Part shown: piece after piece, positions 18,502-49,549 of the stretch
How positions within the stretch are numbered: position 1 is the first letter of the stretch
How the letters are laid out: each line of letters opens with the position of its first letter
IMG/VR virus record: IMGVR_UViG_3300036715_000626
Location: 124,001 to 188,000 of that record
Length of the DNA stretch: 64,000 nt
Strand: one strand, 5' to 3'
Notes under the pieces: model-generated
Told to the model about the DNA's origin: nothing
The model's database searches: none
Seen by the model: the letters and a program-made list of their open reading frames with translations, nothing else
Program-made: the position numbers and the translations under genes

Positions 18502-20658
18502 TTAGACAGTGTGCATGTTGATGGCAAGTTTGCCAAGAGCAAGGTTAAGGTTAGCAACAGTGATCTGTGCAAGGACCGGAAGGTTGATGATGTGCATGTA
18601 ACGAGGGATATTGTGGAATTCACGAATAACCGCTCCACCATTAGAACGAACTACGTCAGTAGTAATCGTTGGCGCCCACAAGAAGTTACCGAAGTTCAAT
18701 GGGTTAATCACTGAATTTTTCTCAGCATCATCGACAACGAATGTGATGAAGATTTTACCAGAAACAAGTTTGTTAGGTGTACTAACAACAGTAACTTCGA
18801 ATTCTTCACCGATGTTCAAACGACTTGAATCAGATGTCAAGTATTGTTTAAGGTGTGGGTCTGTACCGATAACAACACCGATTTTACCGCCAAGGTTACC
18901 ACGCATAACTTCATGAGCAACATTGTAGTTACTAGAAACGTACATGCTAAGTACTTCTTCACGGATTTTGTTTACCAATGCAGCACGGATGTCATTGTAA
19001 CGTTCATTAGATTTGATACTATCAACAGATGTACCAAGGTCTACAGAGAACTCATGGTAGTAAGGGTTAACCAAGTAACCACCAGCACCGACAAGTTTAA
19101 CGTCAGCAGCAGCACCAGAACTAATCACTTGGCTCAATGTACCAGCGTAGTTAGTAAGTGTTTGAACTGCAGAAACGTTTGCACGAATACCAGCTGTTTG
19201 AATTTGGCTTGTCAATTTAGAAGCATCGTTATCGACACCACCAGCATTGTTAACCGGAGAAAGAACAGTGATACCAGAACGGTAGTTAACGTTGTAAACT
19301 TGAACATATTTGTCGTTAGTTACAAGCAATCCACGAGTACGCAAGTTGCTGTTAGTACGCCATGCATCAAGAGTATAACCAAGGAATGAACCAGTGTTGA
19401 ATACCGCAGCGATTGCGATGTAGTCAGCGTTAGTAGACGGAAGAACGTCTCCAGCAGCATTTTTGATTTCAACGATTTCGAACGCAGAACCATATACAGA
19501 AATATCACCAACTTGAACGTTAGCATCACCGTGTAGTTTCATTTTCAAACGTACAGTGTGGTTGTTAGCAAGACTACCAAGAATAGTAGACGCAGCGCCA
19601 TTAGCCATAGTTGTAGTATCTGTGTTAACAATGATTGAATCGCTGTCGAAAGACAATGTCATTGTTTTGAAGTTACCTTGTAGTTGACCAACAAAGTTAG
19701 CACCAGGGAATGCAGAAACAGTCATACGGAAAGTTTCGGTTACAAGTGATTGACCGCTGCCTTCAGTAAGTGTGAAATACACTTTGTCAAGGTTGATGCT
19801 GTGGTCGATTGCATCAGTTGAATCCATTACACCTTTTGCAAGCATAGCCGGAGTTTGTGAAATACCAAGAAGGTTAACAGTTTTACCGATAGCCAAAGGT
19901 GCAGTTGTGAAAGTTTCACCATTTGCAGTAACGCTTGTATCTTGATTCGCGACAAAGAATGCAGAAGAATCTGTAGTTTTTACTGGAATAAGACGGTTTT
20001 TGTCTGTACCGAACAATGTGTTATCATAGATCGCTTTAACAACCGGAGTACGTTGGAACTTAGCTGCATTAGAAGCACCAGAAGCGCTACGCTCGAAGTC
20101 AGTATAGATAGACGTAAATTCAACGTCAACAGAAATACCAGAAACAGTTGGATCGATAACGATAGTTGGGAAGAATGCTTCACCGAATGTATCTTGACGA
20201 GCAGCACCTGCATTGAAAACGATAGAGTAGTAAAGGGCATTGTTAACCGCTTGACCATCAAAAGCTTCGGTAGATAGCATATCAGATTGAACAACATCAC
20301 CATAACCAAGTGATTCAGCGCTTACTTGTGTAGAACCAGCTGGCGCAGTTACTTCACGAAGTGGAGCACTCATGTACGACTTAGGATCAACTGCAAGTTT
20401 AGCGATCATCATAGCCGCTTGACGTTGAGTACCTGAAAGTTTGAAATCTTCATTACCAGCTGAAAGCATAGTGATTGAACGATCAATCGCTTCAGAAAGA
20501 GAATCAGATGCTACTTGAGCATGACTACGAGTCGCTTCATCAAGACCTTCTGCTCCAAGAGCAAGACCTGTAATTTCTTTACGACCATCAAGGCCACTAG
20601 CGGTAATAGTTTGTTTGGTTGATTTAAGCAAATCACCAACGAATGACTTAAGATTCAT
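18502..20658 (-). CDS. Major capsid protein (phiKZ gp120-like)
   Basis: 718 aa; STE/AFDG processing-like site, QDTFGEAFFPTIVIDP, NLRTRGLL and VVIGTDP motifs; high-expression codon bias. Confidence 0.9.
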   Translation of the reverse strand: MNLKSFVGDLLKSTKQTITASGLDGRKEITGLALGAEGLDEATRSHAQVASDSLSEAIDRSITMLSAGNEDFKLSGTQRQAAMMIAKLAVDPKSYMSAPLREVTAPAGSTQVSAESLGYGDVVQSDMLSTEAFDGQAVNNALYYSIVFNAGAARQDTFGEAFFPTIVIDPTVSGISVDVEFTSIYTDFERSASGASNAAKFQRTPVVKAIYDNTLFGTDKNRLIPVKTTDSSAFFVANQDTSVTANGETFTTAPLAIGKTVNLLGISQTPAMLAKGVMDSTDAIDHSINLDKVYFTLTEGSGQSLVTETFRMTVSAFPGANFVGQLQGNFKTMTLSFDSDSIIVNTDTTTMANGAASTILGSLANNHTVRLKMKLHGDANVQVGDISVYGSAFEIVEIKNAAGDVLPSTNADYIAIAAVFNTGSFLGYTLDAWRTNSNLRTRGLLVTNDKYVQVYNVNYRSGITVLSPVNNAGGVDNDASKLTSQIQTAGIRANVSAVQTLTNYAGTLSQVISSGAAADVKLVGAGGYLVNPYYHEFSVDLGTSVDSIKSNERYNDIRAALVNKIREEVLSMYVSSNYNVAHEVMRGNLGGKIGVVIGTDPHLKQYLTSDSSRLNIGEEFEVTVVSTPNKLVSGKIFITFVVDDAEKNSVINPLNFGNFLWAPTITTDVVRSNGGAVIREFHNIPRYMHIINLPVLAQITVANLNLALGKLAINMHTV

Positions 20659-26148: not shown

Positions 26149-27744
26149 TTATAAGCTATAGCCAAAAGCTTTAGTTTCTATATGGCATACCCAAGTAGTA
26201 TATCGGTTAAGATTATTCACCTGAAGATTCCCAGATGAAATTTGAATACTTGGGGTTACCCCATTCATTCCAAAGTCAGAAACTAAAGTAGTCATATCAA
26301 TTGTAGCTAAATCACCACGAACTAAAAATTTTAATTCGGAATAATGTGTAACTGTTGAACTTTCCCGTCCTATAAGAACCAATCTTATAAGTTGCGGAAC
26401 CGCTGAAAAGACATTCATAGGAGTTAGTGTGTTCCACGATGTCGAATAGTCAGATGTCGAATAATCCCCCAATCCTATCCATGTAATGAAATCTTTAGCA
26501 GTAGTATTCGCACCTAGAACGAGACCGCCTTTGGCTGTTATTTTTGCATCAGACGTAATACCCACGTTGGTAGAAAGACCATTTGATCTATCAAATACAC
26601 TATACGATGCGCCAGAAGCAAAGGTTATTCCATTTATATAAGTATTGGTAAATAGTTTCTCACAACTTATAGCTGTGAATGAACTGTTACCAGTCATTGT
26701 GTTATTAAATATTCCAGTAAAATTGGCATCAAAAAATACGCCATTTAAGTTTATGAAACCTTGAGTAAGACTAACACTGCTATTTATTAAACTAGTAGGC
26801 GTTGTCGAATTTCCATAATAAAATCCACCATTAATATTTAGACATAATGTAGGTGATGCGTTCAATATAATAGTTCCGGCATGGTCCTCGCTATAAGCAG
26901 AATTAATATTAATAGCCCCTGCTAAACTCCCAAACTGGTAATCAGCTGTAGTGGATCCTTCTATAATTGATTTGCTTATTGTTACGTTTTTAGAATTTAC
27001 GTAAAGATTTACTACATTACTTTCAATTCTAGAATTAGATATATCTGAAGCTTGAATAGCACCATTAGGGTCATAAATACCATAATTATTTCTACGTATA
27101 TCCAATTTACTTAATCTACAACCAAGAGACTCATATCCACCAATAGCACCATCAAAAGCTATAGGTTTGTCTAGACCATATGCGGAAATATTGAAAAGCT
27201 CTACACCAACTGCTTTCCTGATAAATATTCCTCCAGAACCCGCAACTTTTGAATTTGTTGCATCATTACAATAAAATCCATTAATCTTAGGATTAACGAC
27301 TATGTTAGTGACTAAAGCGCCCCCAGTTGTTTGCCCGATAGTAATGATTGGATAAGTTGTGGGCGTAAATGAACCAACACAAATCACTTCTTGGTAGTTT
27401 AAAGTCATGCATAAAGTTGCAGACGGAACATACAAATCGCCGTCGAGAATTACATATTTATTATAATTTATAGCAGATTGATAAGCGGCGGTCGTTGTTC
27501 CGAACCAGTTAGCATAGATATACTTGTCACATTCACGAACAAAATAAGTCGAACTTATACCCGCAAATGTAATTCCGTTGTCAATGCTTCCGCTTCCAAC
27601 ACGGTTAAATATACCGCCTTGTATAACATCTTTAACATATACAGTTGCTATAGTTAACGGGACTGTTAATAAATCTGTAACTAGAGCTACTGTGTATGTG
27701 TGGTTTCCAACTCCCGAAGGAGTTTTGAATTCTTGTATAGGCAT
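26149..27744 (-). CDS. Tailspike/tail fibre with beta-helix (pectin-lyase-like) region
   Basis: N-terminal module shared with the two upstream tail genes; WFG...AAYQSAIN followed by N/I/S-rich beta-helix repeats. Confidence 0.8.
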   Translation of the reverse strand: MPIQEFKTPSGVGNHTYTVALVTDLLTVPLTIATVYVKDVIQGGIFNRVGSGSIDNGITFAGISSTYFVRECDKYIYANWFGTTTAAYQSAINYNKYVILDGDLYVPSATLCMTLNYQEVICVGSFTPTTYPIITIGQTTGGALVTNIVVNPKINGFYCNDATNSKVAGSGGIFIRKAVGVELFNISAYGLDKPIAFDGAIGGYESLGCRLSKLDIRRNNYGIYDPNGAIQASDISNSRIESNVVNLYVNSKNVTISKSIIEGSTTADYQFGSLAGAININSAYSEDHAGTIILNASPTLCLNINGGFYYGNSTTPTSLINSSVSLTQGFINLNGVFFDANFTGIFNNTMTGNSSFTAISCEKLFTNTYINGITFASGASYSVFDRSNGLSTNVGITSDAKITAKGGLVLGANTTAKDFITWIGLGDYSTSDYSTSWNTLTPMNVFSAVPQLIRLVLIGRESSTVTHYSELKFLVRGDLATIDMTTLVSDFGMNGVTPSIQISSGNLQVNNLNRYTTWVCHIETKAFGYSL

Positions 27745-27758
27745 AAATGTTCCTTTGG

Positions 27759-30700
27759 TTAAACGCGCAACGCGTTCATAGAGTATTTATAATAAGTATT
27801 AGCTGCGCTAGCACTCGTTACACGAAGTCTCATATATCCACCAGATATATCTACGGTATAGGTACATAACGCAGTACCTATCAGTATTTCATTACTAGGA
27901 ACATATGTAACCGTCGCTCCATTATGAATAGCTTTGATATTTATACTGTAATAATTACCAGAATCATCACTAACTTGTAATTCAACAAACATAGTTCTGT
28001 GCGACGTAATCGCTACTTGAACTAAGGTAGTTTGCGTTACAGTCGCTAGCGTCATATCGTACTTAACGTCGCCTAGAATTTCCCAAGGCATCTGTGATGA
28101 AGCCCCAGAATTTAAAGAATTTCCTGCAGCCCATTTGGGCTTAAAAGTAATGCCTTTATTTACAGTACCTTTAGTGCATTGTATCAATGCTGTGAACGGC
28201 GTAGCGTCCACTTGCATTGTAACATCACGAGTTAATACCCACGGAATTTTAGTAGTACCTACTTGAGTCATCATGTATAGACCATTATATAGATCTTTAG
28301 AAGCCATTGCTAACCCACCAAGATTAATTTGGTTCTTAACTATAATACGTTCTTTATAAGCTGGGTTAAACCCATCGACTAGTAACGCAACAACTGATTG
28401 GTTAAACAAAGTTACTTCATTAGTTACTGTAGCTAATGAATTAGCAGACATCGTATACTGAGTAGCACTCTGAATACTTAAAATAGTAGTTCCTGAAGGG
28501 AACGAAGTGGTAGTAGTATTAACGCTAGCACCAACTTTTAAATCAGCAGTAGAAGCTACGGTAACTATAGGTGATCCTGACGACGTAGTTAACTTCTTAG
28601 GAATAGCTTGATCGAAAGAAGTATCAGCTGTTCCAGATGTTCGTACAAAAGAAATAGTTCCTTGTACAGTAGCAGTCGTGGCAATATTGTTACCGCCGTT
28701 CCATGTTACGGTTGTAGTGGTACAACCAGTTACAACAAACGTACCATTCATACTAGCTGGAGTTAATCCCGACACAGTAATAGAAGAATTTACCTTATAA
28801 GGTATGTAAGTTTGTGCTGCAAAAGTAGCTGTTACAACGCCAGTATTAGCAGCTCCCACAACACTTGTTGTGACTATGTCTGGTAATGGTGTCATTACAA
28901 ATGTAGTAGCGTTAGTAATAGACGCAATAGTACTACCAGCAGGTGCAAATAATGTAGCGAGCAATATAGGTGACCCAACTATGAATCCAGAAGTATCAGG
29001 AACCGTGACATTATAGTTACTAGTATTATGAGTACACGATACATAAAGAGAGCCTGAATACCCTTGTAAAGTACTAGCCGCACCAGCTAATCTAGAACTT
29101 GCTCCTAGATCATCAGTTGTTGCAAATACATCTTTAATAGTTTCATAGTTACCATCGAAGAACCTATAATCTGACCCATCGAACCATACTGGTTTATTAG
29201 GAACAGTCTTAGACATAAATTGATAACCGGCAAAAGGGCTAATTGAACGTCGATCATTGTTAGTAAACGAAAGATCATTAGCACCATAGCCTTCTGAAGT
29301 TCTCCAAAAGTCGTAAGGTATTTCAGTATCAGCATAAGTCCCACCCATTACCGATGATGACATTGAAGAATCACAGGCTGCGATTAAGTATGTTGGATTT
29401 CCTTTTGGTACACCCGCAGTTCCTGAATAACCAAAACTTCTACCAGTTACCTCAAAAAATCTTCTACCCTGAGCACCAGTCCTAACCGTTAGTAAACCAC
29501 CCGAATAGGAATCCCCATATATTGAAGATAAACGCATAGCTGTTCTAATTGTGCCATCGATGACGTATTCCCCTTCTAAAAGGTTATAAAAATCTCGATA
29601 CGTCATTATGCCATTTGTACCTGATGGTTTAATGTAATAATGTAAACCATCAAAAGCAACAATGCCTGTGGAATCAAGGGTTAGGATTAAATTTCTATTA
29701 TGTAAATCTTGTACACTAGATTTTTCTGCAGAAGTGTAATCTAAGTTAACTTTCTCAATCTCATAACTAGCCTGAGGATTGCCAATATCAATAGAAGGAA
29801 TTCCTAAACTATTACTTTGAAGACAATAGGCGTAGTTTTTATTTGAAACTGGCCCATTCCAATCCCAAGGTAAGCAGGACTCTAAATCTAAGGCTGAAGT
29901 ACCTACAACTTTAGCAAAGTACATAGTATACGTAGAAGATTGGTGAGAACAGTTCTGGACAATACCATTACACCCTTGTGGAATATTAGTCACAGCCCCA
30001 CCCGGATTTGTACATTCAGAAACGAATCCGAATAACACATCTTCCATCTGCCAATCATTCATAATAGAGGTTGTAATCCAAGGAGCAATCGTCAACCCAA
30101 TATAAATCCATTTTAAGCCATCGAAGTAGATATAGTAATTTTGTGTCCAAAAAGTATTTCCATCGATAGAGGAGTGACCAGCTGTTGTGATAAGATAGTA
30201 GTCTCCCATTGTACCAACACCAGACGTAATTGCAGGTGTATTGGTTTGAGCGTTCCAAGTTCCCTTATTAGTTCCATTTGCGATGCGAGAATCAATATCA
30301 GCATACAGCTGTTCAACTTTAAGATGACCACCTATGTACCATTCACCGTTTACACGGATATTATCAAAGCTGAATCCCCACGGGTCGAAACCTTTACCTG
30401 TAGAGTGTACTCTGACTGCAGAACCACCTGAAACACAGTTGTTAGTAAAGTTACTAAATATAGAAGTTGAAATACCAATATCCTCTGCATGTTGGTCACG
30501 ACCTCCAAACCAATGACTCCAAGGTAACCATAACGGTCTCCCATCATAATCCCCCCCAGCCAATGTGCTACCATCACCACGAGTGAATTCATTCCACTCA
30601 CTATTTATATACAATCCTGAACCGAAGAAGCGATCAACGTTTGAAATAGTTCTACCCATAATTGTAGCAGTGTATGCTGTCATAATGTTGGTTTGAACGG

Positions 30701-31523
30701 TCATTGTTGTTGCTGTTACAGATAATACTGTGTAAGTCCCATCTAAGACGTGTCTAGGGATGTTTGCAACTGCTACGACAGAACCTAGTAACTCTATTTT
30801 AGACCCTATTGGGAAATTTGTGGGGACGGTTGCATCGGAATCATAAGTGATAGTTGCAACACCTGAAGAAGAATTAGATACGGCAGTGTTAACTTTGTAT
30901 TTGCCATTACCGGCCGCTACATGTAAGTCAAACCCAGCTGCTCTCGTTTTAGCTCCTAACCAAATACAGTTATTAGTTTGATTTGCGACAATGCTACAAT
31001 CTTGTTTAAATACAAGACGTGAGTTCTTAGGCCCGAGTATACCAACACCTTCAATAAGTTTTAACTCAGTGTTGTTTAGTAAGTACATTCGGTTAGTTCG
31101 CAATAACCAAGTTACATGCGGTATTGCCATACACGCAAGGAATACTGCTGTATCATCAGTACCTGTTCTTAGATCCCAGTTATAGTCACCTTGAGCTCCA
31201 AACCATTCAAACTCATAGTGAGCTACTTCAGTTCTTACCCAATAACCACTAGTACCAGCAAACACAATACCATTGTCAACAGTATATCCTGTTGCATACC
31301 AGTTGAATACACCCCCACGAAGAGGGTCTGATACTCTTACCGTTCTAACTGCTGCTGGTACGTTAGTAAAGTTACTAACAGTGGCAATAGTAAAATAAGT
31401 ATTAGCATCAGCAGAACCGGCTATCCCGGTTATACCTGCACCGTTTCCTACTAAATAACCAGCGGTGATAGTACCAGATACTAACATATCGCCGATATAT
31501 CGTATAGCTTTCTTAAGTCCCAT
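27759..31523 (-). CDS. Large tail fibre/tailspike (1254 aa)
   Basis: VSDPLRGG module, EWFGAQGD...TDDTAVF, beta-helix body, T/V-rich inserted domains and a phage-fibre-type C-terminal domain. Confidence 0.85.
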   Translation of the reverse strand: MGLKKAIRYIGDMLVSGTITAGYLVGNGAGITGIAGSADANTYFTIATVSNFTNVPAAVRTVRVSDPLRGGVFNWYATGYTVDNGIVFAGTSGYWVRTEVAHYEFEWFGAQGDYNWDLRTGTDDTAVFLACMAIPHVTWLLRTNRMYLLNNTELKLIEGVGILGPKNSRLVFKQDCSIVANQTNNCIWLGAKTRAAGFDLHVAAGNGKYKVNTAVSNSSSGVATITYDSDATVPTNFPIGSKIELLGSVVAVANIPRHVLDGTYTVLSVTATTMTVQTNIMTAYTATIMGRTISNVDRFFGSGLYINSEWNEFTRGDGSTLAGGDYDGRPLWLPWSHWFGGRDQHAEDIGISTSIFSNFTNNCVSGGSAVRVHSTGKGFDPWGFSFDNIRVNGEWYIGGHLKVEQLYADIDSRIANGTNKGTWNAQTNTPAITSGVGTMGDYYLITTAGHSSIDGNTFWTQNYYIYFDGLKWIYIGLTIAPWITTSIMNDWQMEDVLFGFVSECTNPGGAVTNIPQGCNGIVQNCSHQSSTYTMYFAKVVGTSALDLESCLPWDWNGPVSNKNYAYCLQSNSLGIPSIDIGNPQASYEIEKVNLDYTSAEKSSVQDLHNRNLILTLDSTGIVAFDGLHYYIKPSGTNGIMTYRDFYNLLEGEYVIDGTIRTAMRLSSIYGDSYSGGLLTVRTGAQGRRFFEVTGRSFGYSGTAGVPKGNPTYLIAACDSSMSSSVMGGTYADTEIPYDFWRTSEGYGANDLSFTNNDRRSISPFAGYQFMSKTVPNKPVWFDGSDYRFFDGNYETIKDVFATTDDLGASSRLAGAASTLQGYSGSLYVSCTHNTSNYNVTVPDTSGFIVGSPILLATLFAPAGSTIASITNATTFVMTPLPDIVTTSVVGAANTGVVTATFAAQTYIPYKVNSSITVSGLTPASMNGTFVVTGCTTTTVTWNGGNNIATTATVQGTISFVRTSGTADTSFDQAIPKKLTTSSGSPIVTVASTADLKVGASVNTTTTSFPSGTTILSIQSATQYTMSANSLATVTNEVTLFNQSVVALLVDGFNPAYKERIIVKNQINLGGLAMASKDLYNGLYMMTQVGTTKIPWVLTRDVTMQVDATPFTALIQCTKGTVNKGITFKPKWAAGNSLNSGASSQMPWEILGDVKYDMTLATVTQTTLVQVAITSHRTMFVELQVSDDSGNYYSINIKAIHNGATVTYVPSNEILIGTALCTYTVDISGGYMRLRVTSASAANTYYKYSMNALRV

Positions 31524-31536
31524 AATAATTCCTTTC

Positions 31537-34500
31537 TTATACTTCTATAAGTGTTGCAGTGTATTTAAACACTGTGCTGTTAGCTGTTGCTGGTGTAAGA
31601 AGTATTCTTACATTACCACTACTTATATCAGTAGATACGGTAAATTGATCTGTGCCAATTACCAATGAAGCTAATTCAATATGATTAGGAGTCGTGCCAT
31701 CATGATTAACCAATATTTCGGTATCATGATAGTTAGTACCCTGTGTTGCTTGAATTGTCATACGAACAGACCGATAGGTTGCAATAGGAAAAGTAGCCAA
31801 CACCTGGTTAGCTGTAACCGAAGTAGTTGTTAATGATCCTTTACAAGTACCGATATCCCAAGTTGCACCATTCCATGTTATACTGCAACCTAGTGTGGTA
31901 TCGTAATAACGTTGGTTAATTTTAAGATTAGTAGCTGGTCGTTGAGCGGTAGTTCCAGAGGTTAACGCATCTGCTGGAGTTCCCAATTCATCACTATTAA
32001 TCCATATACTACCATTCCAGATAATATTTCTTCCAAGTGTTGTGTCGAAATAAGGTTGACCAACTACCATAAAGGTGTGTGCTGGGCGTTGCGCTGTGGT
32101 TCCTGAAAATAACTGTTCTACTAATGATTCGTTAATAACTAAATAACCATTTTCATCGACGTATCCAGCACCCACTCTTCTATATACTTCTCTAGGTGTC
32201 GATAAATCAGATATCCATATATCATCACCATTCTGGTATACATCTTTTCCATAAGTTAGGTTTGCTTTAGTAGATAATCTACTAGCTAATGCATATCTAC
32301 CAGAACTATCTTTCCAGAATGTTCTAGATATCTCTTTATCGGCAAATACTGATGATTCAATATTAGCTAATGAATAACCTAAACAAGCAAATAATACACC
32401 AGTTCTCGCACCACCAGCATATCGGTCAAGTACTAATCTAGTAGGTGTTCCGGATGTAACAGTTACTGACGTACTAGATACATATGTATATGTATTAGCA
32501 TCAACTACTGTGATATATTTATCCATTTCTTCAACTACGTTGTCTAGATTAGTATCAAAACTTAATATTTTACCAGTGCTGTAACCATGAGCAGTATGTG
32601 TAACTGTGGCTGTTGTTCCTGATTGTGCATAAGTAGCACTATTAATAACAGTAGGAATAGATTGTGTTACAGGGGTATATCGTAAAAATTTAATACCATC
32701 ATAACCTTCCCAGACATCTAAATAACCAGGTTCTGCTGGTGTATTAGGATTCCGCATTTGTAAACTGGTAGTAACATTACTATCATTAGCGATATAATAA
32801 CGTCCGTTAACCAAACGAGCAATATCTCTATAGGTCCATTTACCAACACTGTTAGCAAGTTTAGAAGAACCTTTTGTAGGTAATGTATTTTGAATTAGTG
32901 TAGTCTCTTGTCCAAATACAGATGGGTTAACAGCACCTAAAGTAATCTGTTTACGTATTTCAGAATTTGCTTTAATCAACATTCTAACAGTACCATTAGT
33001 GGTAGATGATGATGCTGCTACATATGTAAAGTTATTAGCATCAACAACACTAGCTATAGTATATTGACCATCGTAACCTGAACCAGTATTATATTTAAGC
33101 CATACATAATCGCCTACAGATTTACCATGATTAGGTATATTTACATTAACTGTTGTAGTACCAGTCATAGTATAAGTACCAGAAACATACTCACCACGAA
33201 TATCAATGTTACCATCAATAGAGTCTAGGTCTGTAAATTGAGCACCACTAAAGTTAGTAGTTTGGTTAATAGCATAACCTTCATTCCCGATAGAATAAGG
33301 TTTATAGGTAGTTCCGGTAGCAGGATTACAGTTAGCTGTGTTCGCCCAGTCCCAAGGAGTACAGTTAATAAGTCTTGGATTGTGAGAACTCATGCCATAG
33401 AAGAATACTTCTGATCTCCAGCGAGTCATAGTTGTATTGACACCTGAAGCCGTAACTAACGCAGGTTGATCAAAAGTTACTGTGGTACCATTTATATTAG
33501 TAATTTTACTACCAAATATAAATTGTGTCGTAGTAGTAGCTACCATATGACCGATAGCTAACCCACTAACCGATGCAAATGTAGCATCGTATGAACCAGC
33601 AGTAGTTGTAACAGAATATGTAGTACCAATAGTATCATTAACTGCTTGCGCCCATATATTAGTATACGTTGTTTTAGCGATCTCACCACCGAGTTGTGAC
33701 GTGATAGTTTTACCACCTGTATTTCTGTGGATTTCTCTAATAATATTTTTAGAAGATGCTACTGTGAAATCTTCAAAGTTACCAGAGTTAATCCAAGAAT
33801 AATGCGATGTAGTGTCACTATCTGGATACATCTGATCAGCGATAGTAGAAATAGTCCAGTCCCATTTACCAGAAACATGGATTTCTCTAAATAAGTGTCC
33901 CCACGGGGAAGTACCTTTACCAGTAGCGATACAAGTAATAGCCGAGGCACCATTAGAGACTCCGTTATTATTCCACGATGAACCAAGAGATATTCCATTA
34001 TCTGCTAAGATAATAGATACTTTACTTACTTTAGGTCTACGTGTCATGTCACCATAAGCATAGCCATTCGAATCAATTCCACCAGAAGATAATACATAGG
34101 ATTCATATTGAGCATAGGTATTATATTCACTATTGTACATAATACCAGAACCTGCAAAGGTAGTATTGTGTATTCCTAAACGGATACCATCTATGATACA
34201 AGGACCTGCTACCCATAAACCAGATTTAGTAGAACCAGCTGTTGAGTAAGTAATATCCATTACAGCACTACCGTCACTTTGTAGTTTACAGGTAGACGGA
34301 ACTTTAAATTCGATATCTGTAAATTTATAAGTTGTATTATGTGTTAAAATCAAAGATTTCAAAGTACCGCGCCAACGCATATATGCATTGTTATAATCAG
34401 TAGTTTCCGTAGAGTGTCTAAACCACTCTAACTTACAGTATGTATCACCATAATCACGTTTAAGATATGTGTTAGATAAACCGGCAAATATAGTACCATC

Positions 34501-35400
34501 GTCAGTATAGAATTTAACATAACCACATTCAGTAGATGATACATCAGAAGTAACTATCAAATCATAGGTACCTGCTACAACACTACCAGAAGAAGTATAC
34601 GTTACAGAGTTAACATCACACGCGGTAACGGTAACAGTACCGTTGTATCCAGTTTTAGCAGTAACTGTGATAGATTGCCCGACGGTAAATGGTGCTTCTG
34701 CTTGGGTAATACCAAATGTTGCCACAACAGGTTTTGCGCTTCCAGAAGTAGCTACATAAACACGACTAAAACGAATATAACGACACACTTCAGCAGTTGA
34801 AGTACGTTTAAACGTACCACCACGTAATGGGTCTGAAACAATTATGTTATTATATGTTACAGGTACAGTTGCGAGATCATCTACGGTAGCAACGATATAT
34901 GGAGCTGGTAATGTGATATCTGCAGTATCGTCAAATAGAGTACCGTGAATATGAAAAGCGGCAAAAGCACTCCCGCTACCGCCACTGATAACTATATTAC
35001 CAGGACCAATAATAGAGTTATTATTAATAGTTTTTAAGTTACTAAATAATGTATCTATTTGACTTGTCGAATAAGCACCAATTTGCGCTGGCGTATGTGT
35101 ATGATCGCTAGCAGCTTTATTAGCTAAAGCAGTAGCTAATCCTGCGATATTGCTAATAGATAATGTATCTAAAGTAGTTTTATTTAAAACGATATAATCT
35201 ACTATCTCTTGAAGTGTGTCAAGATTAACATTATTACTACCTACGAGTGTGATTAAGTTATCAATGTACCCTTTAAGTAACTTACCTTGATTAGCGCTAA
35301 GTGCTTTACTAGTAGCAGTAGATGTTAAGTTATCTATAATATCACTTATGGTCATTCCACCAGAAAGCGTTCCTGGTACTCTTAGTGAACCGAATGGCAT
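31537..35400 (-). CDS. Large tail fibre/tailspike (1287 aa), paralog of 27759-31523
   Basis: IIDNLTST...ALSANQGKLL, VSDPLRGG and GTTAQRP repeats; C-terminal YRSVRMTIQ...ISSGNVRILLTP domain. Confidence 0.85.
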   Translation of the reverse strand: MPFGSLRVPGTLSGGMTISDIIDNLTSTATSKALSANQGKLLKGYIDNLITLVGSNNVNLDTLQEIVDYIVLNKTTLDTLSISNIAGLATALANKAASDHTHTPAQIGAYSTSQIDTLFSNLKTINNNSIIGPGNIVISGGSGSAFAAFHIHGTLFDDTADITLPAPYIVATVDDLATVPVTYNNIIVSDPLRGGTFKRTSTAEVCRYIRFSRVYVATSGSAKPVVATFGITQAEAPFTVGQSITVTAKTGYNGTVTVTACDVNSVTYTSSGSVVAGTYDLIVTSDVSSTECGYVKFYTDDGTIFAGLSNTYLKRDYGDTYCKLEWFRHSTETTDYNNAYMRWRGTLKSLILTHNTTYKFTDIEFKVPSTCKLQSDGSAVMDITYSTAGSTKSGLWVAGPCIIDGIRLGIHNTTFAGSGIMYNSEYNTYAQYESYVLSSGGIDSNGYAYGDMTRRPKVSKVSIILADNGISLGSSWNNNGVSNGASAITCIATGKGTSPWGHLFREIHVSGKWDWTISTIADQMYPDSDTTSHYSWINSGNFEDFTVASSKNIIREIHRNTGGKTITSQLGGEIAKTTYTNIWAQAVNDTIGTTYSVTTTAGSYDATFASVSGLAIGHMVATTTTQFIFGSKITNINGTTVTFDQPALVTASGVNTTMTRWRSEVFFYGMSSHNPRLINCTPWDWANTANCNPATGTTYKPYSIGNEGYAINQTTNFSGAQFTDLDSIDGNIDIRGEYVSGTYTMTGTTTVNVNIPNHGKSVGDYVWLKYNTGSGYDGQYTIASVVDANNFTYVAASSSTTNGTVRMLIKANSEIRKQITLGAVNPSVFGQETTLIQNTLPTKGSSKLANSVGKWTYRDIARLVNGRYYIANDSNVTTSLQMRNPNTPAEPGYLDVWEGYDGIKFLRYTPVTQSIPTVINSATYAQSGTTATVTHTAHGYSTGKILSFDTNLDNVVEEMDKYITVVDANTYTYVSSTSVTVTSGTPTRLVLDRYAGGARTGVLFACLGYSLANIESSVFADKEISRTFWKDSSGRYALASRLSTKANLTYGKDVYQNGDDIWISDLSTPREVYRRVGAGYVDENGYLVINESLVEQLFSGTTAQRPAHTFMVVGQPYFDTTLGRNIIWNGSIWINSDELGTPADALTSGTTAQRPATNLKINQRYYDTTLGCSITWNGATWDIGTCKGSLTTTSVTANQVLATFPIATYRSVRMTIQATQGTNYHDTEILVNHDGTTPNHIELASLVIGTDQFTVSTDISSGNVRILLTPATANSTVFKYTATLIEV

Positions 35401-35401
35401 A

Positions 35402-35668
35402 TCATACCTCCTCGCACCAGATCACATCAATAACATAATCACTATCAGACCAAACCCATGTTGGTAGGTGTCCTCCGTACTCAATATAGGTACTGTTACT
35501 TAGCGGAAACCCAAAAGTAGGTTGCGTCGTGCTATGTGCATACCGTGCACCTTGAAAAAATTCTACTCCTTTAACAGACTGACCTTCCACACCAAACTTA
35601 ACTTCTACTGATCCATCTGATATTTGGAATGGTACATTCCCGACATCTAATTCACGTTTCATACCCAT
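35402..35668 (-). CDS. Small tail-associated hypothetical protein
   Basis: 88-aa first gene of the tail-fibre operon. Confidence 0.65.
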   Translation of the reverse strand: MGMKRELDVGNVPFQISDGSVEVKFGVEGQSVKGVEFFQGARYAHSTTQPTFGFPLSNSTYIEYGGHLPTWVWSDSDYVIDVIWCEEV

Positions 35669-35816: not shown

Positions 35817-36389
35817 TTAACAATCGATTTGTTCAACAACAACACCTAACCTACGAAGTTTATCAATACCTTTAGTATTAGTATAATCATGCTTGTAAAC
35901 CACTCTACTTATTTTAGATTGAATAAGTGCGTTAGCGCATTTTATACAAGGTGCTAACGTTACATAGATAGTTCCTCCTCTAGCAGCTATACCGTTAGCA
36001 GCACAATCTGATAGTAAATTAATTTCAGCATGTATAATGGCATCATCATCACCATGTTTTTCTATAACGATAACTGGAATAGGCACATCATCCGGATATA
36101 CAGTTTTGGTGCCACATATGTATTTATTATGCTCGTTTGCGTCATCAAAGGCTTCAAATTCCATACCGCAATGACTGCATACATAGTAATCTTTTTCACA
36201 ACAGTTATTATCACCAGCAACAGTTCCATTTCGTGAGCTGGCTCTCTCACGCTCATCTACCACTAATACACAACCAACTTTAGCGTTAACACAAGTTGAT
36301 TCTTCAGCCCATTTCACAGCTGATCTCATAAAGATATAATCATCTTTAGTAAAGTCAACATCATTCATTCTTTCCTCAAACACACCCAT
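35817..36389 (-). CDS. dCMP deaminase (ComEB/T4 cd-like) with an inserted zinc finger
   Basis: KVGCVLV, NGT, HAEINLL and TLAPCIKCANALIQSKI motifs. Confidence 0.9.
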   Translation of the reverse strand: MGVFEERMNDVDFTKDDYIFMRSAVKWAEESTCVNAKVGCVLVVDERERASSRNGTVAGDNNCCEKDYYVCSHCGMEFEAFDDANEHNKYICGTKTVYPDDVPIPVIVIEKHGDDDAIIHAEINLLSDCAANGIAARGGTIYVTLAPCIKCANALIQSKISRVVYKHDYTNTKGIDKLRRLGVVVEQIDC

Positions 36390-47170: not shown

Positions 47171-47199
47171 GTAAGTAGGAAGCAATGCTTCCTACTTAC
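47171..47199. terminator. Palindrome (14-bp arms, 1-nt spacer) overlapping the topA stop
   Basis: GTAAGTAGGAAGCA-A-TGCTTCCTACTTAC. Confidence 0.7.
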
Positions 47200-49549
47200 G
47201 ATTAAACTTTTTGAAGGGTTTCTTTTTAACAGGATCGTTTTCCTGTTTCGCTATAATAGCAACGACCTCATCGACGGTTAAGTTTCTTATAGCACTTTCT
47301 AACATATCTTTAGGTAATTTAAAGTTACCTTTTGGATATCCACCACCCACCCCATGTCTGAGTATATATGGTCCAAACCGACCATTTATAATACTAATTT
47401 CTCCATAGGGATTAATCGTTTTATTCCAAAGTAATGCAGTTGCTTTCTTCTCATCAATCTCTTTGATAATATCTAATGCTCTAGATATTTCTATAGTATA
47501 GACATTATCTTGCTCTGAGTTAAGAGGATAGTATTTATTTCCAGATTTTAGATATGGACCAAACTTACCGATACCGACAATTACATTTTCCCCTTTATTA
47601 TTTTTACCCAGTATCTTAGGAATAGTTAAGTACACCAAAGCTTGTTCTAATGTTACTTCGTTAAATTTCACATCCCTAGGTACTGTCGCTACTTTAGGTT
47701 TTATCTTTTTCTCTTTATCAGGATCGCCTACCTGAATGTAGTTTCCGTAATTACCAGATTTAACTTTAATAGCTAACCCAGTTTCAGCATCTACCCCAAG
47801 CACTCGTTCTTCCGTGTATTGAACACGCTCACCATCTTCTTTAGCTACCAAATCTTTACTAAAGTTGGTATAGAAGTTACGGATAACCTCTTGCCACTCA
47901 ATTTCACCTGCGGCTATCTTATCAAACTCTGCTTCAATATTCGCAGTGAAAGCTATATCCACGATATAAGGAAAGTTCATCGTTAAGTAATCAGTAACAG
48001 CCATAGCAATAACAGTAGGTACCAGTTTCTTATCGCCATCAATCTCAACATAACCTCTGGTTGTTATGGTAGATAAAGTAGAAGCATAGGTTGATGGTCT
48101 ACCGATCCCTTCTTGCTCCATCTTCTTAACTAGAGAAGCTTCCGTGTATCTAGGAGGTGGTGATGTAAAATTTTGCTCGGCTGAAAGAACTGTATTATTA
48201 AACATGGTATTCAAAGGAACGTTAGGAAGAAACTTTTCTTTCTTACCTATACTCTCATCACCATCGTCATTACCTTCGGTATAGGCTTTCATAAACCCAG
48301 GAAATAATATCTTGGTTCCTTTAGCTACGAATTCGTATTCTCTATTAGAACCTCCATATATTTTATAGGTAGTAGTAGCAACTTTAGCTGCTGTCATTTG
48401 TGTTGCTAATGTTCTTTGCCAAATCAACGTATAGAGCTTTAACTCTTTGCTGTCAACATACCGAGCAATATCACTTGGCTTAATAGACATATCAACAGGC
48501 CGTATAGCTTCATGTGCTTCTTGGGCAGCTACTTTAGCATTACCTTTGGCGCTATAAGTTCTAGGTGAACTAAGAGCATACTCTGTTCCGTAGTCAGAGA
48601 GTATAACCCGTTTACAAGCATCAAGAACCAGCTGTGAAAGATTGAGACTATCTGTTCTCATATACGTTATAAGACCACCAGGTTGATTGGGTATACTAAA
48701 CCCACCTTCATACAGCTTCTGTGCAACAGACATAGTTTGTTTAGGAGACATACCTGCTTTGGTACTTGCTTCTTGTTGTAATGATGATGTTGTAAACGGA
48801 GCAGGAGGAGTTCTAAAACTATCCTTCTCATCAACACTACTCAGAACATAATTACTCTTATCACACTCAGCTTTTATAGTGGATGCTTGTAACTCGTTTT
48901 CTACTTTAATAACCTTACCGTTGTGTTTAGAAAATTCAGCCTTAAATGCCAGGTCAGTAAGTATGTCAAGTTTTAGCTTCCAAAATTCATCTGGTATAAA
49001 ACTTTTTATTTCACGTTCTCTGTCAACAACAATTTTAAGAGTAGAGCTTTGAACCCTACCAGCACTCAGGCCACCTTTAACTTTCTTCCATAATAGAGGA
49101 GAGAGCTTGTAACCAACGATACGATCAAGTATGCGTCTAGCCTGCTGAGCATTAACCATATTGATATCTAACTCTCTAGGGTGCTCTAACGCGTGCAGGA
49201 TAGCAGACTTGGTTATCTCGTGAAATACAATCCGTTTAGGATTGTAATTCTCAATACCTAGCGTAGGAATAAGATGCCATGATATAGCTTCACCTTCACG
49301 GTCTTCATCACTGGCTAGGTAAATAGTAGTGTCTTTACCTATATATCGTTTTAGTTCAGATATAACTCTTTTCTTATCGACAGAAACTTCGTACTGAGGA
49401 TTGAAGTTATTTTCAGTATCTACTCCTAAAGTAGATTTAGGAAGATCTCGTATATGACCATATGACGCCAGTACTTTGTATTCACTTCCTAAAAACCCAG
49501 TAAGTGTTTTGGCCTTAGCAGGAGATTCTACAATAATCAGATTTTTCAT
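47192..49549 (-). CDS. topA: Type IA DNA topoisomerase with C-terminal Toprim_C repeats
   Basis: LIIVESPAKAK, GHIRDLP, DEDREGEAI, SAGRVQS, ITYMRTDS, AHEAIRP, GIGRPSTYA, G.FGPY repeats. Confidence 0.95.
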   Translation of the reverse strand: MKNLIIVESPAKAKTLTGFLGSEYKVLASYGHIRDLPKSTLGVDTENNFNPQYEVSVDKKRVISELKRYIGKDTTIYLASDEDREGEAISWHLIPTLGIENYNPKRIVFHEITKSAILHALEHPRELDINMVNAQQARRILDRIVGYKLSPLLWKKVKGGLSAGRVQSSTLKIVVDREREIKSFIPDEFWKLKLDILTDLAFKAEFSKHNGKVIKVENELQASTIKAECDKSNYVLSSVDEKDSFRTPPAPFTTSSLQQEASTKAGMSPKQTMSVAQKLYEGGFSIPNQPGGLITYMRTDSLNLSQLVLDACKRVILSDYGTEYALSSPRTYSAKGNAKVAAQEAHEAIRPVDMSIKPSDIARYVDSKELKLYTLIWQRTLATQMTAAKVATTTYKIYGGSNREYEFVAKGTKILFPGFMKAYTEGNDDGDESIGKKEKFLPNVPLNTMFNNTVLSAEQNFTSPPPRYTEASLVKKMEQEGIGRPSTYASTLSTITTRGYVEIDGDKKLVPTVIAMAVTDYLTMNFPYIVDIAFTANIEAEFDKIAAGEIEWQEVIRNFYTNFSKDLVAKEDGERVQYTEERVLGVDAETGLAIKVKSGNYGNYIQVGDPDKEKKIKPKVATVPRDVKFNEVTLEQALVYLTIPKILGKNNKGENVIVGIGKFGPYLKSGNKYYPLNSEQDNVYTIEISRALDIIKEIDEKKATALLWNKTINPYGEISIINGRFGPYILRHGVGGGYPKGNFKLPKDMLESAIRNLTVDEVVAIIAKQENDPVKKKPFKKFNRK

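What the first reader, a model, noticed from the sequence alone, without database searches (positions are those of the whole stretch)
27759..35400. Two paralogous RBPs share one scaffold but carry different plug-in domains in different loops
Seen: collinear matches, 1254-aa protein first: FFGSGLYINSEWN/FAGSGIMYNSEYN, STGKGFDPWGFSF/ATGKGTSPWGHLF, CLPWDWN/CTPWDWA, TYRDFYNLLEGEY/TYRDIARLVNGRY, YADTEIPYDFWRTSEG/FADKEISRTFWKDSSG. Between these anchors each protein has 60-100 aa T/V-rich inserts the other lacks. The 1254-aa protein has one before FFGSG and a GTWNAQTNTP...DYYLI module. The 1287-aa protein has one inside the SDPLRGG module, one before WRSEVFF, and two H-G-Y/K-S..G..V barrels. Inference: RBP diversification by loop-level domain insertion rather than C-terminal swapping.
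Basis: partly seen in the sequence, partly recalled or inferred. Interest (0 to 1): 0.6.

Follow-up and report, generated by a model that had tools for sequence, protein, structure and literature searches.

The report
Tailspike pair with plug-in loop domains
Two neighbouring tail-spike genes of a phiKZ-like jumbo phage share one rare beta-helix core, into which six small extra domains are inserted at six different sites; this is a clear but not unprecedented case of phages varying host-recognition proteins by loop insertion as well as end swapping.

Summary
The 1254-aa protein (window 27759-31523, minus strand) and the 1287-aa protein (31537-35400, minus strand) share a collinear core at about 23% identity. 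A collinear alignment scores z = 15.8 against shuffles.

A profile built only from three short, insert-free podovirus homologues hits both proteins in collinear pieces (E 5.5e-41 and 1e-25).

All six reported inserts are clean insertions relative to those homologues:
- 1254-aa protein: residues 212-292 and 412-478.
- 1287-aa protein: residues 203-292, 587-658, 733-812 and 912-995.

The core is most likely a pectate-lyase-type right-handed beta-helix tailspike. The two "H-G" barrels belong to the endosialidase beta-barrel family (Pfam PF12195). The GTWNAQ unit is a widespread module of phage tail proteins with no Pfam family.

The two genes are not sister copies: the 1287-aa protein groups with a T7-like podovirus tailspike. 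Their N- and C-terminal parts differ as well, so loop insertion acts alongside end swapping rather than instead of it.

Insertion domains in beta-helix depolymerases are already described, with up to two per protein. Both AlphaFold models were poor, so whether the inserts protrude from helix turns remains untested.

The parts
27759..31523 (-). Gene for the 1254-aa tailspike-like protein (P0001)
   Evidence: ORF, translation. Its orthologue P0004 is 76% identical over 1216 aa with only 5 gaps. The insert-free core HMM hits it at E 5.5e-41.
31224..31403 (-). P0001 residues 41-100: N-terminal module (SDPLRGG...) that precedes the beta-helix. It is shared by all three tandem genes.
   Evidence: Pfam K1-lyase_N scores 22.9 bits, below the cut-off of 27. 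It matches P0003 at E 5e-9 and P0002 at E 8e-5. Many library hits match profile positions 1-130 only. Profile A13 hits tail fibre 5w5p (E 3e-4) and K1 lyase 7w1c (E 0.004).
30891..31223 (-). P0001 residues 101-211: first rungs of the beta-helix, with the WFGAQGD...TDDTAVF motif
   Evidence: Profile A13 positions 61-88 match the first rung of many solved beta-helix enzymes and tailspikes.
30648..30890 (-). P0001 residues 212-292: inserted small T/V-rich domain (type B)
   Evidence: Absent from P0002, P0008, P0009, P0066 and P0014 at this site. Resembles P0001 884-962 (shuffle z 6.9). DNA identity to the orthologue drops from 0.92 to 0.52-0.68 here.
30291..30647 (-). P0001 residues 293-411: core segment carrying the FFGSG..SEW and STGKG..PWG anchors
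   Evidence: HMM positions 160-252, E 2.9e-11. BLASTP against P0002 gives E 3e-10.
30090..30290 (-). P0001 residues 412-478: inserted GTWNAQ module, a widespread module of about 57 aa in phage tail proteins
   Evidence: Lies between HMM positions 252 and 255. Dozens of library proteins match only this module. Alignment A10 has 15 invariant columns. All 15 members hit phrog_31460 'tail protein'. No Pfam or PDB match; CBM_5_12 appears only weakly.
29286..30089 (-). P0001 residues 479-746: core segment without inserts, carrying the C.PWDW, TYRD and FW anchors
   Evidence: HMM positions 255-511, E 1.1e-33.
28392..29048 (-). P0001 residues 826-1044: three small T/V-rich domains in tandem (types C, B, C)
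   Evidence: Pairwise shuffle z is about 7 within each type. The region is 86-95% identical to P0004. Type C plus the following domain also occurs in the unrelated fibre protein P0005 (E 5e-16).
27762..28085 (-). P0001 residues 1147-1254: C-terminal domain shared with P0002 and P0014
   Evidence: BLASTP E 2e-9. hhalign probability 94%.
31537..35400 (-). Gene for the 1287-aa tailspike-like protein (P0002)
   Evidence: ORF, translation. P0006 is about 93% identical (MAFFT; the search table gives 88%) and is cut by the contig end. The core HMM hits it at E 1e-25.
34912..35400 (-). P0002 residues 1-163: fibre-type N-terminus, absent from P0001
   Evidence: Pfam Phage_fiber_rpt E 2.6e-11 and PTR. 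PHROG tail-fibre families. Matches Campylobacter phage tail-fibre proteins.
34525..34794 (-). P0002 residues 203-292: small domain inserted inside the N-terminal module (tentatively type B)
   Evidence: The module halves 168-197 and 294-327 align with the contiguous P0001 residues 44-108. Twelve homologous modules have no insert at this point.
33427..33642 (-). P0002 residues 587-658: small domain inserted before the WRSEVFF anchor (tentatively type C)
   Evidence: Falls within the break between HMM positions 288 and 290, which are separated by P0002 residues 567-641. Absent from all other family members.
32965..33204 (-). P0002 residues 733-812: inserted endosialidase-type beta-barrel (type A)
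   Evidence: Pfam PF12195 scores 35.6 bits against a cut-off of 35 when the segment is scanned alone, and 28.1 bits in the whole protein. PDB endosialidases match at E 4e-4. It is the only insert part of the model with pLDDT 65-85, showing six strands. P0014 carries an insert at the same site.
32416..32667 (-). P0002 residues 912-995: second inserted type A barrel
   Evidence: 37% identical to 733-812 (E 5e-10; z 10.8). The two share a 30-nt stretch at 87% identity (family D1). Absent from P0014, P0001 and the short homologues.
31858..32106 (-). P0002 residues 1099-1181: two copies of a C-terminal motif of about 35 aa (RP..G..yfDtTLg..IWnG..W)
   Evidence: HMM positions 592-627 are hit twice. 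phrog_20787. P0006 has one copy only. The motif is widespread and occurs at the C-terminus of solved chains 9d83_D and CBA120 TSP3.
26149..27744 (-). Third tandem gene (P0003, 531 aa). It shares only the N-terminal module.
   Evidence: BLASTP against P0001 gives E 5e-9 over residues 10-82. The core HMM does not hit it (E 0.05). No Pfam or PHROG family.

Best explanation
These are two of three tandem tail-spike or receptor-binding genes of a phiKZ-like jumbo phage. Both proteins are built on the same rare core. That core is most likely a pectate-lyase-type right-handed beta-helix, preceded by a small N-terminal module and followed by a conserved C-terminal motif.

Small, independently folding domains have been inserted into this core at lineage-specific points. 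The 1254-aa protein has one T/V-rich domain and one GTWNAQ tail-protein module. The 1287-aa protein has four T/V-rich domains, two of which are endosialidase-type beta-barrels. One of its four sits inside the N-terminal module rather than the helix.

By analogy with the endosialidase barrel, which binds polysialic acid, the inserts most likely act as auxiliary glycan-binding or active-site-shaping units that tune host specificity. This functional step is inferred.

The genes diversify by a mix of three processes:
- loop insertion;
- exchange of the N- and C-terminal parts;
- horizontal transfer of whole genes between unrelated phages.
For: Shared core:
- Collinear HSPs and shuffle z = 15.8.
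- An independent insert-free HMM hits both proteins in collinear order.
- 16 invariant columns across 8 family members fall on the anchors.

Inserts are additions:
- P0008, P0009 and P0066 (599-647 aa) lack all of them; P0014 has one.
- Each insert site is occupied in a single lineage of the tree.

Beta-helix tailspike identity:
- P0066 passes Pfam PF12708 (36.6 bits against a cut-off of 27).
- Language-model features of P0008 point to PF12708 clusters (score 0.94).
- All 50 best structural matches of the (poor) model are right-handed beta-helices. K1 capsule lyase 7w1c is first (Z 14.4, rmsd 4.2 over 192 residues).
- The N-module and first-rung profile hits solved tailspikes and depolymerases.
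- The C-terminal part of the family profile hits CBA120 tailspike 3 (E 6.7e-5).
- P0014 and P0008 lie in T7-like podovirus genomes. P0014 sits among tail and lysis genes: nozzle, holin, CHAP domain, T7_gp14.

Identity of the inserts:
- PF12195 and endosialidase PDB hits.
- The GTWNAQ module matches PHROG tail families.

Function of the endosialidase barrel: it carries a polysialic-acid binding site and is a host-discrimination hotspot (PMC12632334).

Gene mobility:
- Only this one gene is shared with contig L001.
- Identity to the orthologue is a mosaic.

Phage type: phiKZ major capsid protein, E 1.6e-148.
Against: - No confident 3-D model exists (mean pLDDT 40 and 42.5). That the inserts protrude from helix turns, and that the T/V-rich types B and C are beta-barrels, are therefore inferred.
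- P0001 and P0002 themselves have no above-threshold Pfam beta-helix hit.
- The family is tiny: about seven distinct members were found, so the presence/absence survey is thin.
- HMMs built from one protein's small domains do not detect the other protein's. The cross-protein typing of B and C rests only on BLASTP E 1e-3 to 3e-3 and shuffle z of about 7.
- No enzymatic or binding activity, host or virion location is known.
Confidence: 0.75

Rival explanations
1. The extra segments are ancestral parts of the fold that were precisely deleted in the short podovirus homologues. On this view there was loss rather than insertion.
For: Podovirus genomes are compact, and only about seven family members are known, so the polarity rests on few taxa. 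The tree is unrooted.
Against: Each of the six sites is occupied in only one lineage and empty in all others, including the other jumbo-phage protein. Loss would therefore need three or more independent precise deletions per site. Type A and the GTWNAQ module are independent, mobile domains found in unrelated proteins.
Confidence: 0.08
2. The two genes are recent tandem duplicates within this genome that then diverged by gaining different inserts.
For: The genes are adjacent, on the same strand and 13 bp apart. They share the N-terminal module and the last ~105-aa domain. A third gene with the same N-terminal module follows.
Against: Core identity is only 23%. P0002 groups with podovirus P0014 at 100% bootstrap, and P0001 sits on a separate long branch. 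No DNA repeat longer than 32 nt links the genes. The P0001 orthologue lies in an unrelated phage without a P0002-like neighbour.
Confidence: 0.15
3. The resemblance between the two proteins comes only from shared mobile end modules and low-complexity T/V-rich composition, not from a common core.
For: The strongest single HSPs include the C-terminal domain and the N-terminal module. hhalign reported only the C-terminal domain. T/V-rich segments inflate uncorrected scores.
Against: The best HSP (E 3e-10) lies in the core and is not T/V-rich. A profile from unrelated podovirus proteins that lack those end modules and inserts hits both cores (domain E 1.1e-33 and 3.4e-12) in the same order. Invariant columns fall on the core anchors.
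Confidence: 0.02

Closest known systems
Beta-helix phage depolymerases with 'insertion domains' (LKA1 gp49, KP34 gp57; DepoCatalog Class 2A-2D)
   Same: A central right-handed beta-helix from which an extra beta-rich domain protrudes. The position of the insertion varies between enzymes: near cap 1, in the middle, or near cap 2. One class has two insertions (PMC5701251, PMC10653864, PMC13385381).
   Different: Here the core is a separate, very rare sequence family with no Pfam hit in most members. One protein carries four inserts of at least two sequence types, one of them inside the N-terminal module rather than the helix. The inserts include recognisable mobile domains (PF12195, the GTWNAQ module). 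No structure or activity is known here.
Endosialidases of phages K1F and phi92 (PDB 1v0e, 3gvk, 4hiz)
   Same: They carry the same small beta-barrel (Pfam PF12195) inserted into the catalytic domain of a tailspike. In K1F that barrel binds polysialic acid and affects host discrimination.
   Different: In endosialidases the barrel is inserted in a six-bladed beta-propeller. Here it is inserted, twice, in a protein whose core matches beta-helix enzymes. No endosialidase propeller, N-terminal extension or chaperone domain was found in P0002.
Klebsiella K1 capsule-specific lyase (PDB 7w1c) and other pectate-lyase-fold tailspikes (phiAB6, Pam1, CBA120 TSP2/3)
   Same: Best structural matches of the core (Z 11-14). 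They share a similar N-terminal module and a first-rung GAxGDG..DDT motif. The CBA120 TSP3 C-terminal region matches the family profile.
   Different: Sequence identity is about 10%. The Pfam K1-lyase_N hit is below threshold. Catalytic residues cannot be mapped.

Membership tests
Right-handed parallel beta-helix (pectate-lyase-fold) phage tailspike / depolymerase | Sequence membership in a pectate-lyase-like family (Pfam PF12708 / PF13229) | tested here: inconclusive
   P0001 and P0002 have no hit. Their homologue P0066 passes PF12708 (36.6 bits against a cut-off of 27). Features of P0008 point to PF12708 clusters (0.94). The first-rung motif profile hits many solved beta-helix enzymes.
Right-handed parallel beta-helix (pectate-lyase-fold) phage tailspike / depolymerase | Beta-helix three-dimensional fold | tested here: inconclusive
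   All top 50 VIA-align matches are beta-helices (best is 7w1c: Z 14.4, rmsd 4.2, 192 residues aligned). However, the model has mean pLDDT 42.5.
Right-handed parallel beta-helix (pectate-lyase-fold) phage tailspike / depolymerase | Homotrimer attached to the virion tail; polysaccharide-degrading activity | not testable with these tools
   Only context is available. P0014 lies among tail and lysis genes of a T7-like phage. The N-terminus of P0002 has tail-fibre repeats.
Pfam PF12195 End_beta_barrel (endosialidase beta-barrel) | Score at or above the curated cut-off of 35 bits | tested here: met
   P0002 733-812 scanned alone scores 35.6 bits, E 9.4e-9; two of nine segments match. In the whole protein the score is 28.1 bits, below the cut-off. 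PDB endosialidases match at E 4e-4. This is a borderline pass.
Pfam PF24145 K1-lyase_N | Score at or above the curated cut-off of 27 bits | tested here: not met
   P0001 69-98 scores 22.9 bits. The module profile against 7w1c gives E 0.004 over 42 positions. It resembles the family but is not filed as a member.
Insertion-domain depolymerases (DepoCatalog Class 2) | An extra domain interrupts the central domain relative to insert-free relatives | tested here: met
   Insert-free HMM positions that are adjacent in the profile are separated by 67-75 residues in the two proteins. Alignment A4 shows one-lineage-only blocks.
Insertion-domain depolymerases (DepoCatalog Class 2) | The insert forms an antiparallel beta structure protruding from the helix | tested here: inconclusive
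   Only residues 733-812 of P0002 were modelled with fair confidence (pLDDT 65-85, six strands). Their position relative to the core is unreliable.

The most novel reading that the evidence does not exclude
The same small domain types alternate between loop-inserted and tandem 'beads-on-a-string' positions, both within a gene and between the two adjacent genes. Type B is in a helix loop and the C-terminal array of the 1254-aa protein, and in the N-module loop of the 1287-aa protein. Type C is in the C-terminal array of one protein and a helix loop of the other. Type A is duplicated from one loop to another. This would point to a copy-and-paste domain shuttle as a routine way for jumbo phages to build new receptor-binding proteins, allowing up to four inserts on one beta-helix.
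Probability: 0.3. Interest if true: 0.6.

Novelty: new variant of a known kind. Interest (0 to 1): 0.45.

Why it matters
Host-range prediction and tailspike engineering usually treat receptor-binding proteins as N-anchor, central domain and C-terminal tip, with swapping at the ends.

This pair comes with insert-free relatives for comparison. It gives a natural series on one core with zero, one, two and four inserted domains. That series shows which surface positions of a beta-helix tolerate a whole extra domain, and it shows that a known glycan-binding barrel (PF12195) can be moved from a propeller to a helix context.

It also defines a rare tailspike family and a widespread tail-protein module (GTWNAQ) that has no Pfam family. 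The principle of insertion domains in depolymerases is already published, so the gain is one of degree and of a clean comparative example, not a new mechanism.

Tried and rejected
1. AlphaFold2 on P0001:40-800 and P0002:164-1100 with 8-row alignments gave mean pLDDT 40.2 and 42.5. These models cannot place the inserts. Only the fold-level search and one barrel were used, with caveats.
2. Word-based homologue searches found only close orthologues (P0004, P0006) and two partial hits. The search with the profile of the three insert-free homologues plus P0014 (A5) found only its own first member.
3. Scans of viral contigs with single proteins found nothing. Scans with alignments recovered only the contigs of P0008 and P0014.
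4. Metagenome scans:
   - One found nothing.
   - One returned 149 hits, almost all matching only the ~40-aa C-terminal motif.
   - L024 is a frameshifted extra homologue and was not used.
   - Some of these loci are phage or bacterial contigs from human-gut metagenomes. None was taken for human DNA, and none was studied further.
5. A 31-row alignment mixing module fragments (A6) misaligned the N-module with the GTWNAQ module and was discarded.
6. My first reading, that all eight T/V-rich segments form one family, was withdrawn. With composition-preserving shuffles they split into three types, with cross-type z below 4. Leave-one-protein-out and type-specific HMMs do not cross-detect.
7. Junction microhomology could not be tested. 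No DNA repeat longer than 32 nt exists in 26149-35400, and the copies are too diverged.
8. Neighbours of P0004 in L001 are unrelated to P0002 and P0003.
9. hhalign of the two 2-row profiles reported only the C-terminal domain.
10. Not used because not needed: reads tools, complex prediction and alternative genetic codes.


Full report
**Setting**

The window is bases 124001-188000 of a single 205,015-bp contig with 35% G+C. The contig encodes a phiKZ-type major capsid protein (window 18502-20658, Pfam PF25620, E 1.6e-148). It is therefore a phiKZ-like jumbo phage genome.

Three minus-strand genes lie head to tail:
- P0002: 31537-35400, 1287 aa.
- P0001: 27759-31523, 1254 aa.
- P0003: 26149-27744, 531 aa.

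BLASTP finds these collinear HSPs, given as P0001 / P0002:
- 44-73 / 168-197 (E 8e-5)
- 299-412 / 415-530 (E 3e-10)
- 632-693 / 847-909 (E 0.04)
- 708-745 / 997-1034 (E 0.04)
- 1147-1254 / 1181-1287 (E 2e-9)

A local alignment with cheap gap extension scores 662, against 358 +/- 19 for 100 shuffles (z = 15.8).

The strongest test is independent of both proteins. An exhaustive profile search found four further core homologues: P0008 (605 aa), P0009 (599 aa), P0066 (647 aa) and P0014 (817 aa). An HMM built only from the first three hits P0001 at E 5.5e-41 and P0002 at E 1e-25, in collinear pieces. Profile positions that are adjacent are pulled apart by P0001 residues 412-478 and by P0002 residues 567-641.

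**The inserts are additions**

Alignment A4 and the HMM alignments show six blocks, each present in one lineage only.

In P0001:
- 212-292, before the FFGSG anchor.
- 412-478, the GTWNAQ module.

In P0002:
- 203-292, inside the SDPLRGG module. The two halves of that module align with the contiguous P0001 residues 44-108 and with twelve uninterrupted homologous modules.
- 587-658, before the WRSEVFF anchor.
- 733-812.
- 912-995.

P0008, P0009 and P0066 have none of these. P0014 has only the equivalent of 733-812, at the same site and with matching flanks. Because every site is occupied in a single lineage of the core tree, gain is far more parsimonious than repeated precise loss.

**What the core is**

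- P0066 passes Pfam PF12708, the pectate-lyase-like family (36.6 bits against a cut-off of 27).
- Language-model features of P0008 point to PF12708 clusters (0.94).
- A profile of the N-terminal module plus the first rung hits tail fibre 5w5p and K1 lyase 7w1c. It also matches the GAxGDG..DDT first rung of many solved beta-helix enzymes and tailspikes.
- The C-terminal part of the family profile hits CBA120 tailspike 3 (E 6.7e-5).
- The AlphaFold model of P0002:164-1100 is poor (pLDDT 42.5). Even so, all 50 best structural matches are right-handed beta-helices, led by the K1 capsule lyase (Z 14.4, rmsd 4.2, 192 residues).
- P0014 sits among nozzle, holin, CHAP and T7_gp14 genes of a T7-like phage. 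P0008 sits in another T7-like contig.

Together these make a beta-helix tailspike the best reading. Neither P0001 nor P0002 has an above-threshold Pfam beta-helix hit of its own.

**What the inserts are**

*Type A.* P0002 733-812 scanned alone passes Pfam PF12195, the endosialidase beta-barrel (35.6 bits against a cut-off of 35). It matches solved endosialidases (E 4e-4; Foldseek top hits). It is also the only insert modelled with fair confidence (pLDDT 65-85, six strands). P0002 912-995 is 37% identical to it (z 10.8), and the two share a 30-nt stretch at 87% identity. This is consistent with an intragenic copy.

In phage K1F this barrel binds polysialic acid and is a host-discrimination hotspot (PMC12632334).

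*GTWNAQ module.* This is a sharply conserved unit of about 57 aa. It occurs, often repeated, in dozens of otherwise unrelated proteins. All fifteen sampled copies hit PHROG tail-protein families. It has no Pfam family and no solved structure, and CBM_5_12 appears only weakly.

*Types B and C.* With composition-preserving shuffles, the remaining T/V-rich segments fall into two groups:
- Type B: P0001 212-292, P0001 884-962, P0002 203-292 (z about 7).
- Type C: P0001 826-884, P0001 972-1044, P0002 588-662 (z about 7).

The cross-protein links are tentative. BLASTP gives only E 1e-3 and 3e-3, and HMMs built from one protein's copies do not find the other's. Their fold is unknown. A language-model lead to E1_FCCH-type barrels (0.89) is only a lead.

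**Where the interpretation needs correction**

First, the two genes are not sister copies. On 471 shared core columns P0002 is 32% identical to podovirus P0014 and 23% identical to P0001. P0002 groups with P0014 at 100% bootstrap. The orthologue of P0001 (P0004, 76% identical, all inserts kept) lies on an 18-kb contig that shares no other gene with this 205-kb genome. Whole tailspike genes therefore move between unrelated phages.

Second, the ends differ as much as the loops:
- P0002 has a 163-aa fibre-type N-terminus and two copies of a widespread C-terminal motif. Its variant P0006 has one copy.
- P0001 has three tandem small domains and a further domain shared with the unrelated fibre protein P0005.

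DNA identity between P0001 and P0004 is a mosaic along the gene:

| P0001 residues | DNA identity to P0004 |
|---|---|
| 101-200 | about 0.92 |
| 201-300 (covers insert 212-292) | 0.52-0.68 |
| 301-780 | 0.43-0.88 |
| 781-1180 | 0.85-1.00 |
| 1181-1254 | 0.62-0.73 |

Loop insertion therefore works together with end exchange and recombination, not instead of them.

**Comparison with what is known**

Insertion domains protruding from the beta-helix of phage depolymerases are described for LKA1 gp49 and KP34 gp57. DepoCatalog classifies them by position, with a 'double insertion' class. The endosialidase barrel is itself a domain inserted into a catalytic propeller.

Four things are new here:
- a rare, unnamed core family;
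- up to four inserts on one protein, one of them inside the N-terminal module;
- PF12195 in a beta-helix context;
- a natural series with zero, one, two and four inserts.

I rate it a new variant of a known kind.

**Limits**

- There is no confident 3-D model, so protrusion from helix turns is untested.
- Only about seven distinct family members are known.
- The host, the activity and the virion location are unknown.
- All translations used table 11.

Noticed in passing
window 26149-27744 (minus strand): A third tandem gene (P0003, 531 aa) shares only the N-terminal SDPLRGG-type module with the two large proteins. It has no Pfam, PHROG or PDB match otherwise. It may be a third receptor-binding protein on a different core.
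   Followed up: partly
window 30090-30290 (P0001 residues 412-478): The GTWNAQ unit is a highly conserved module of about 57 aa with 15 invariant columns. It is present, often in several copies, in dozens of unrelated phage tail proteins. It has no Pfam family and no solved structure, only a weak CBM_5_12 resemblance.
   Followed up: partly
L001:10001-13687 compared with window 27759-31523: The 76%-identical orthologue is the only gene shared between an 18-kb phage contig and this 205-kb genome. DNA identity along the gene is a sharp mosaic, from 0.43 to 1.00 in 20-codon windows. This indicates transfer of the whole gene plus later internal recombination.
   Followed up: yes
window 31858-32106 (P0002 residues 1099-1181): The C-terminal motif of about 35 aa (RP..G..yfDtTLg..IWnG..W) is duplicated here, single in the 93%-identical variant P0006, and degenerate in P0001 (758-790). 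It is very widespread in metagenomic tail proteins and occurs at the C-terminus of solved chains 9d83_D and CBA120 TSP3.
   Followed up: partly
window 18502-20658 (minus strand): A phiKZ-type major capsid protein (PF25620, E 1.6e-148) identifies the contig as a phiKZ-like jumbo phage.
   Followed up: no
window 35817-36389 and 47192-49549 (minus strand): A dCMP deaminase (E 1.1e-18) and a full-length type IA DNA topoisomerase (E 4e-120) are encoded close to the tailspike genes. Most other large ORFs in the window have no family match.
   Followed up: no
window 35402-35668 (minus strand): An 88-aa ORF ends one base before the start of the 1287-aa gene. It has no family match. It could be a small tail-assembly or chaperone gene.
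   Followed up: no
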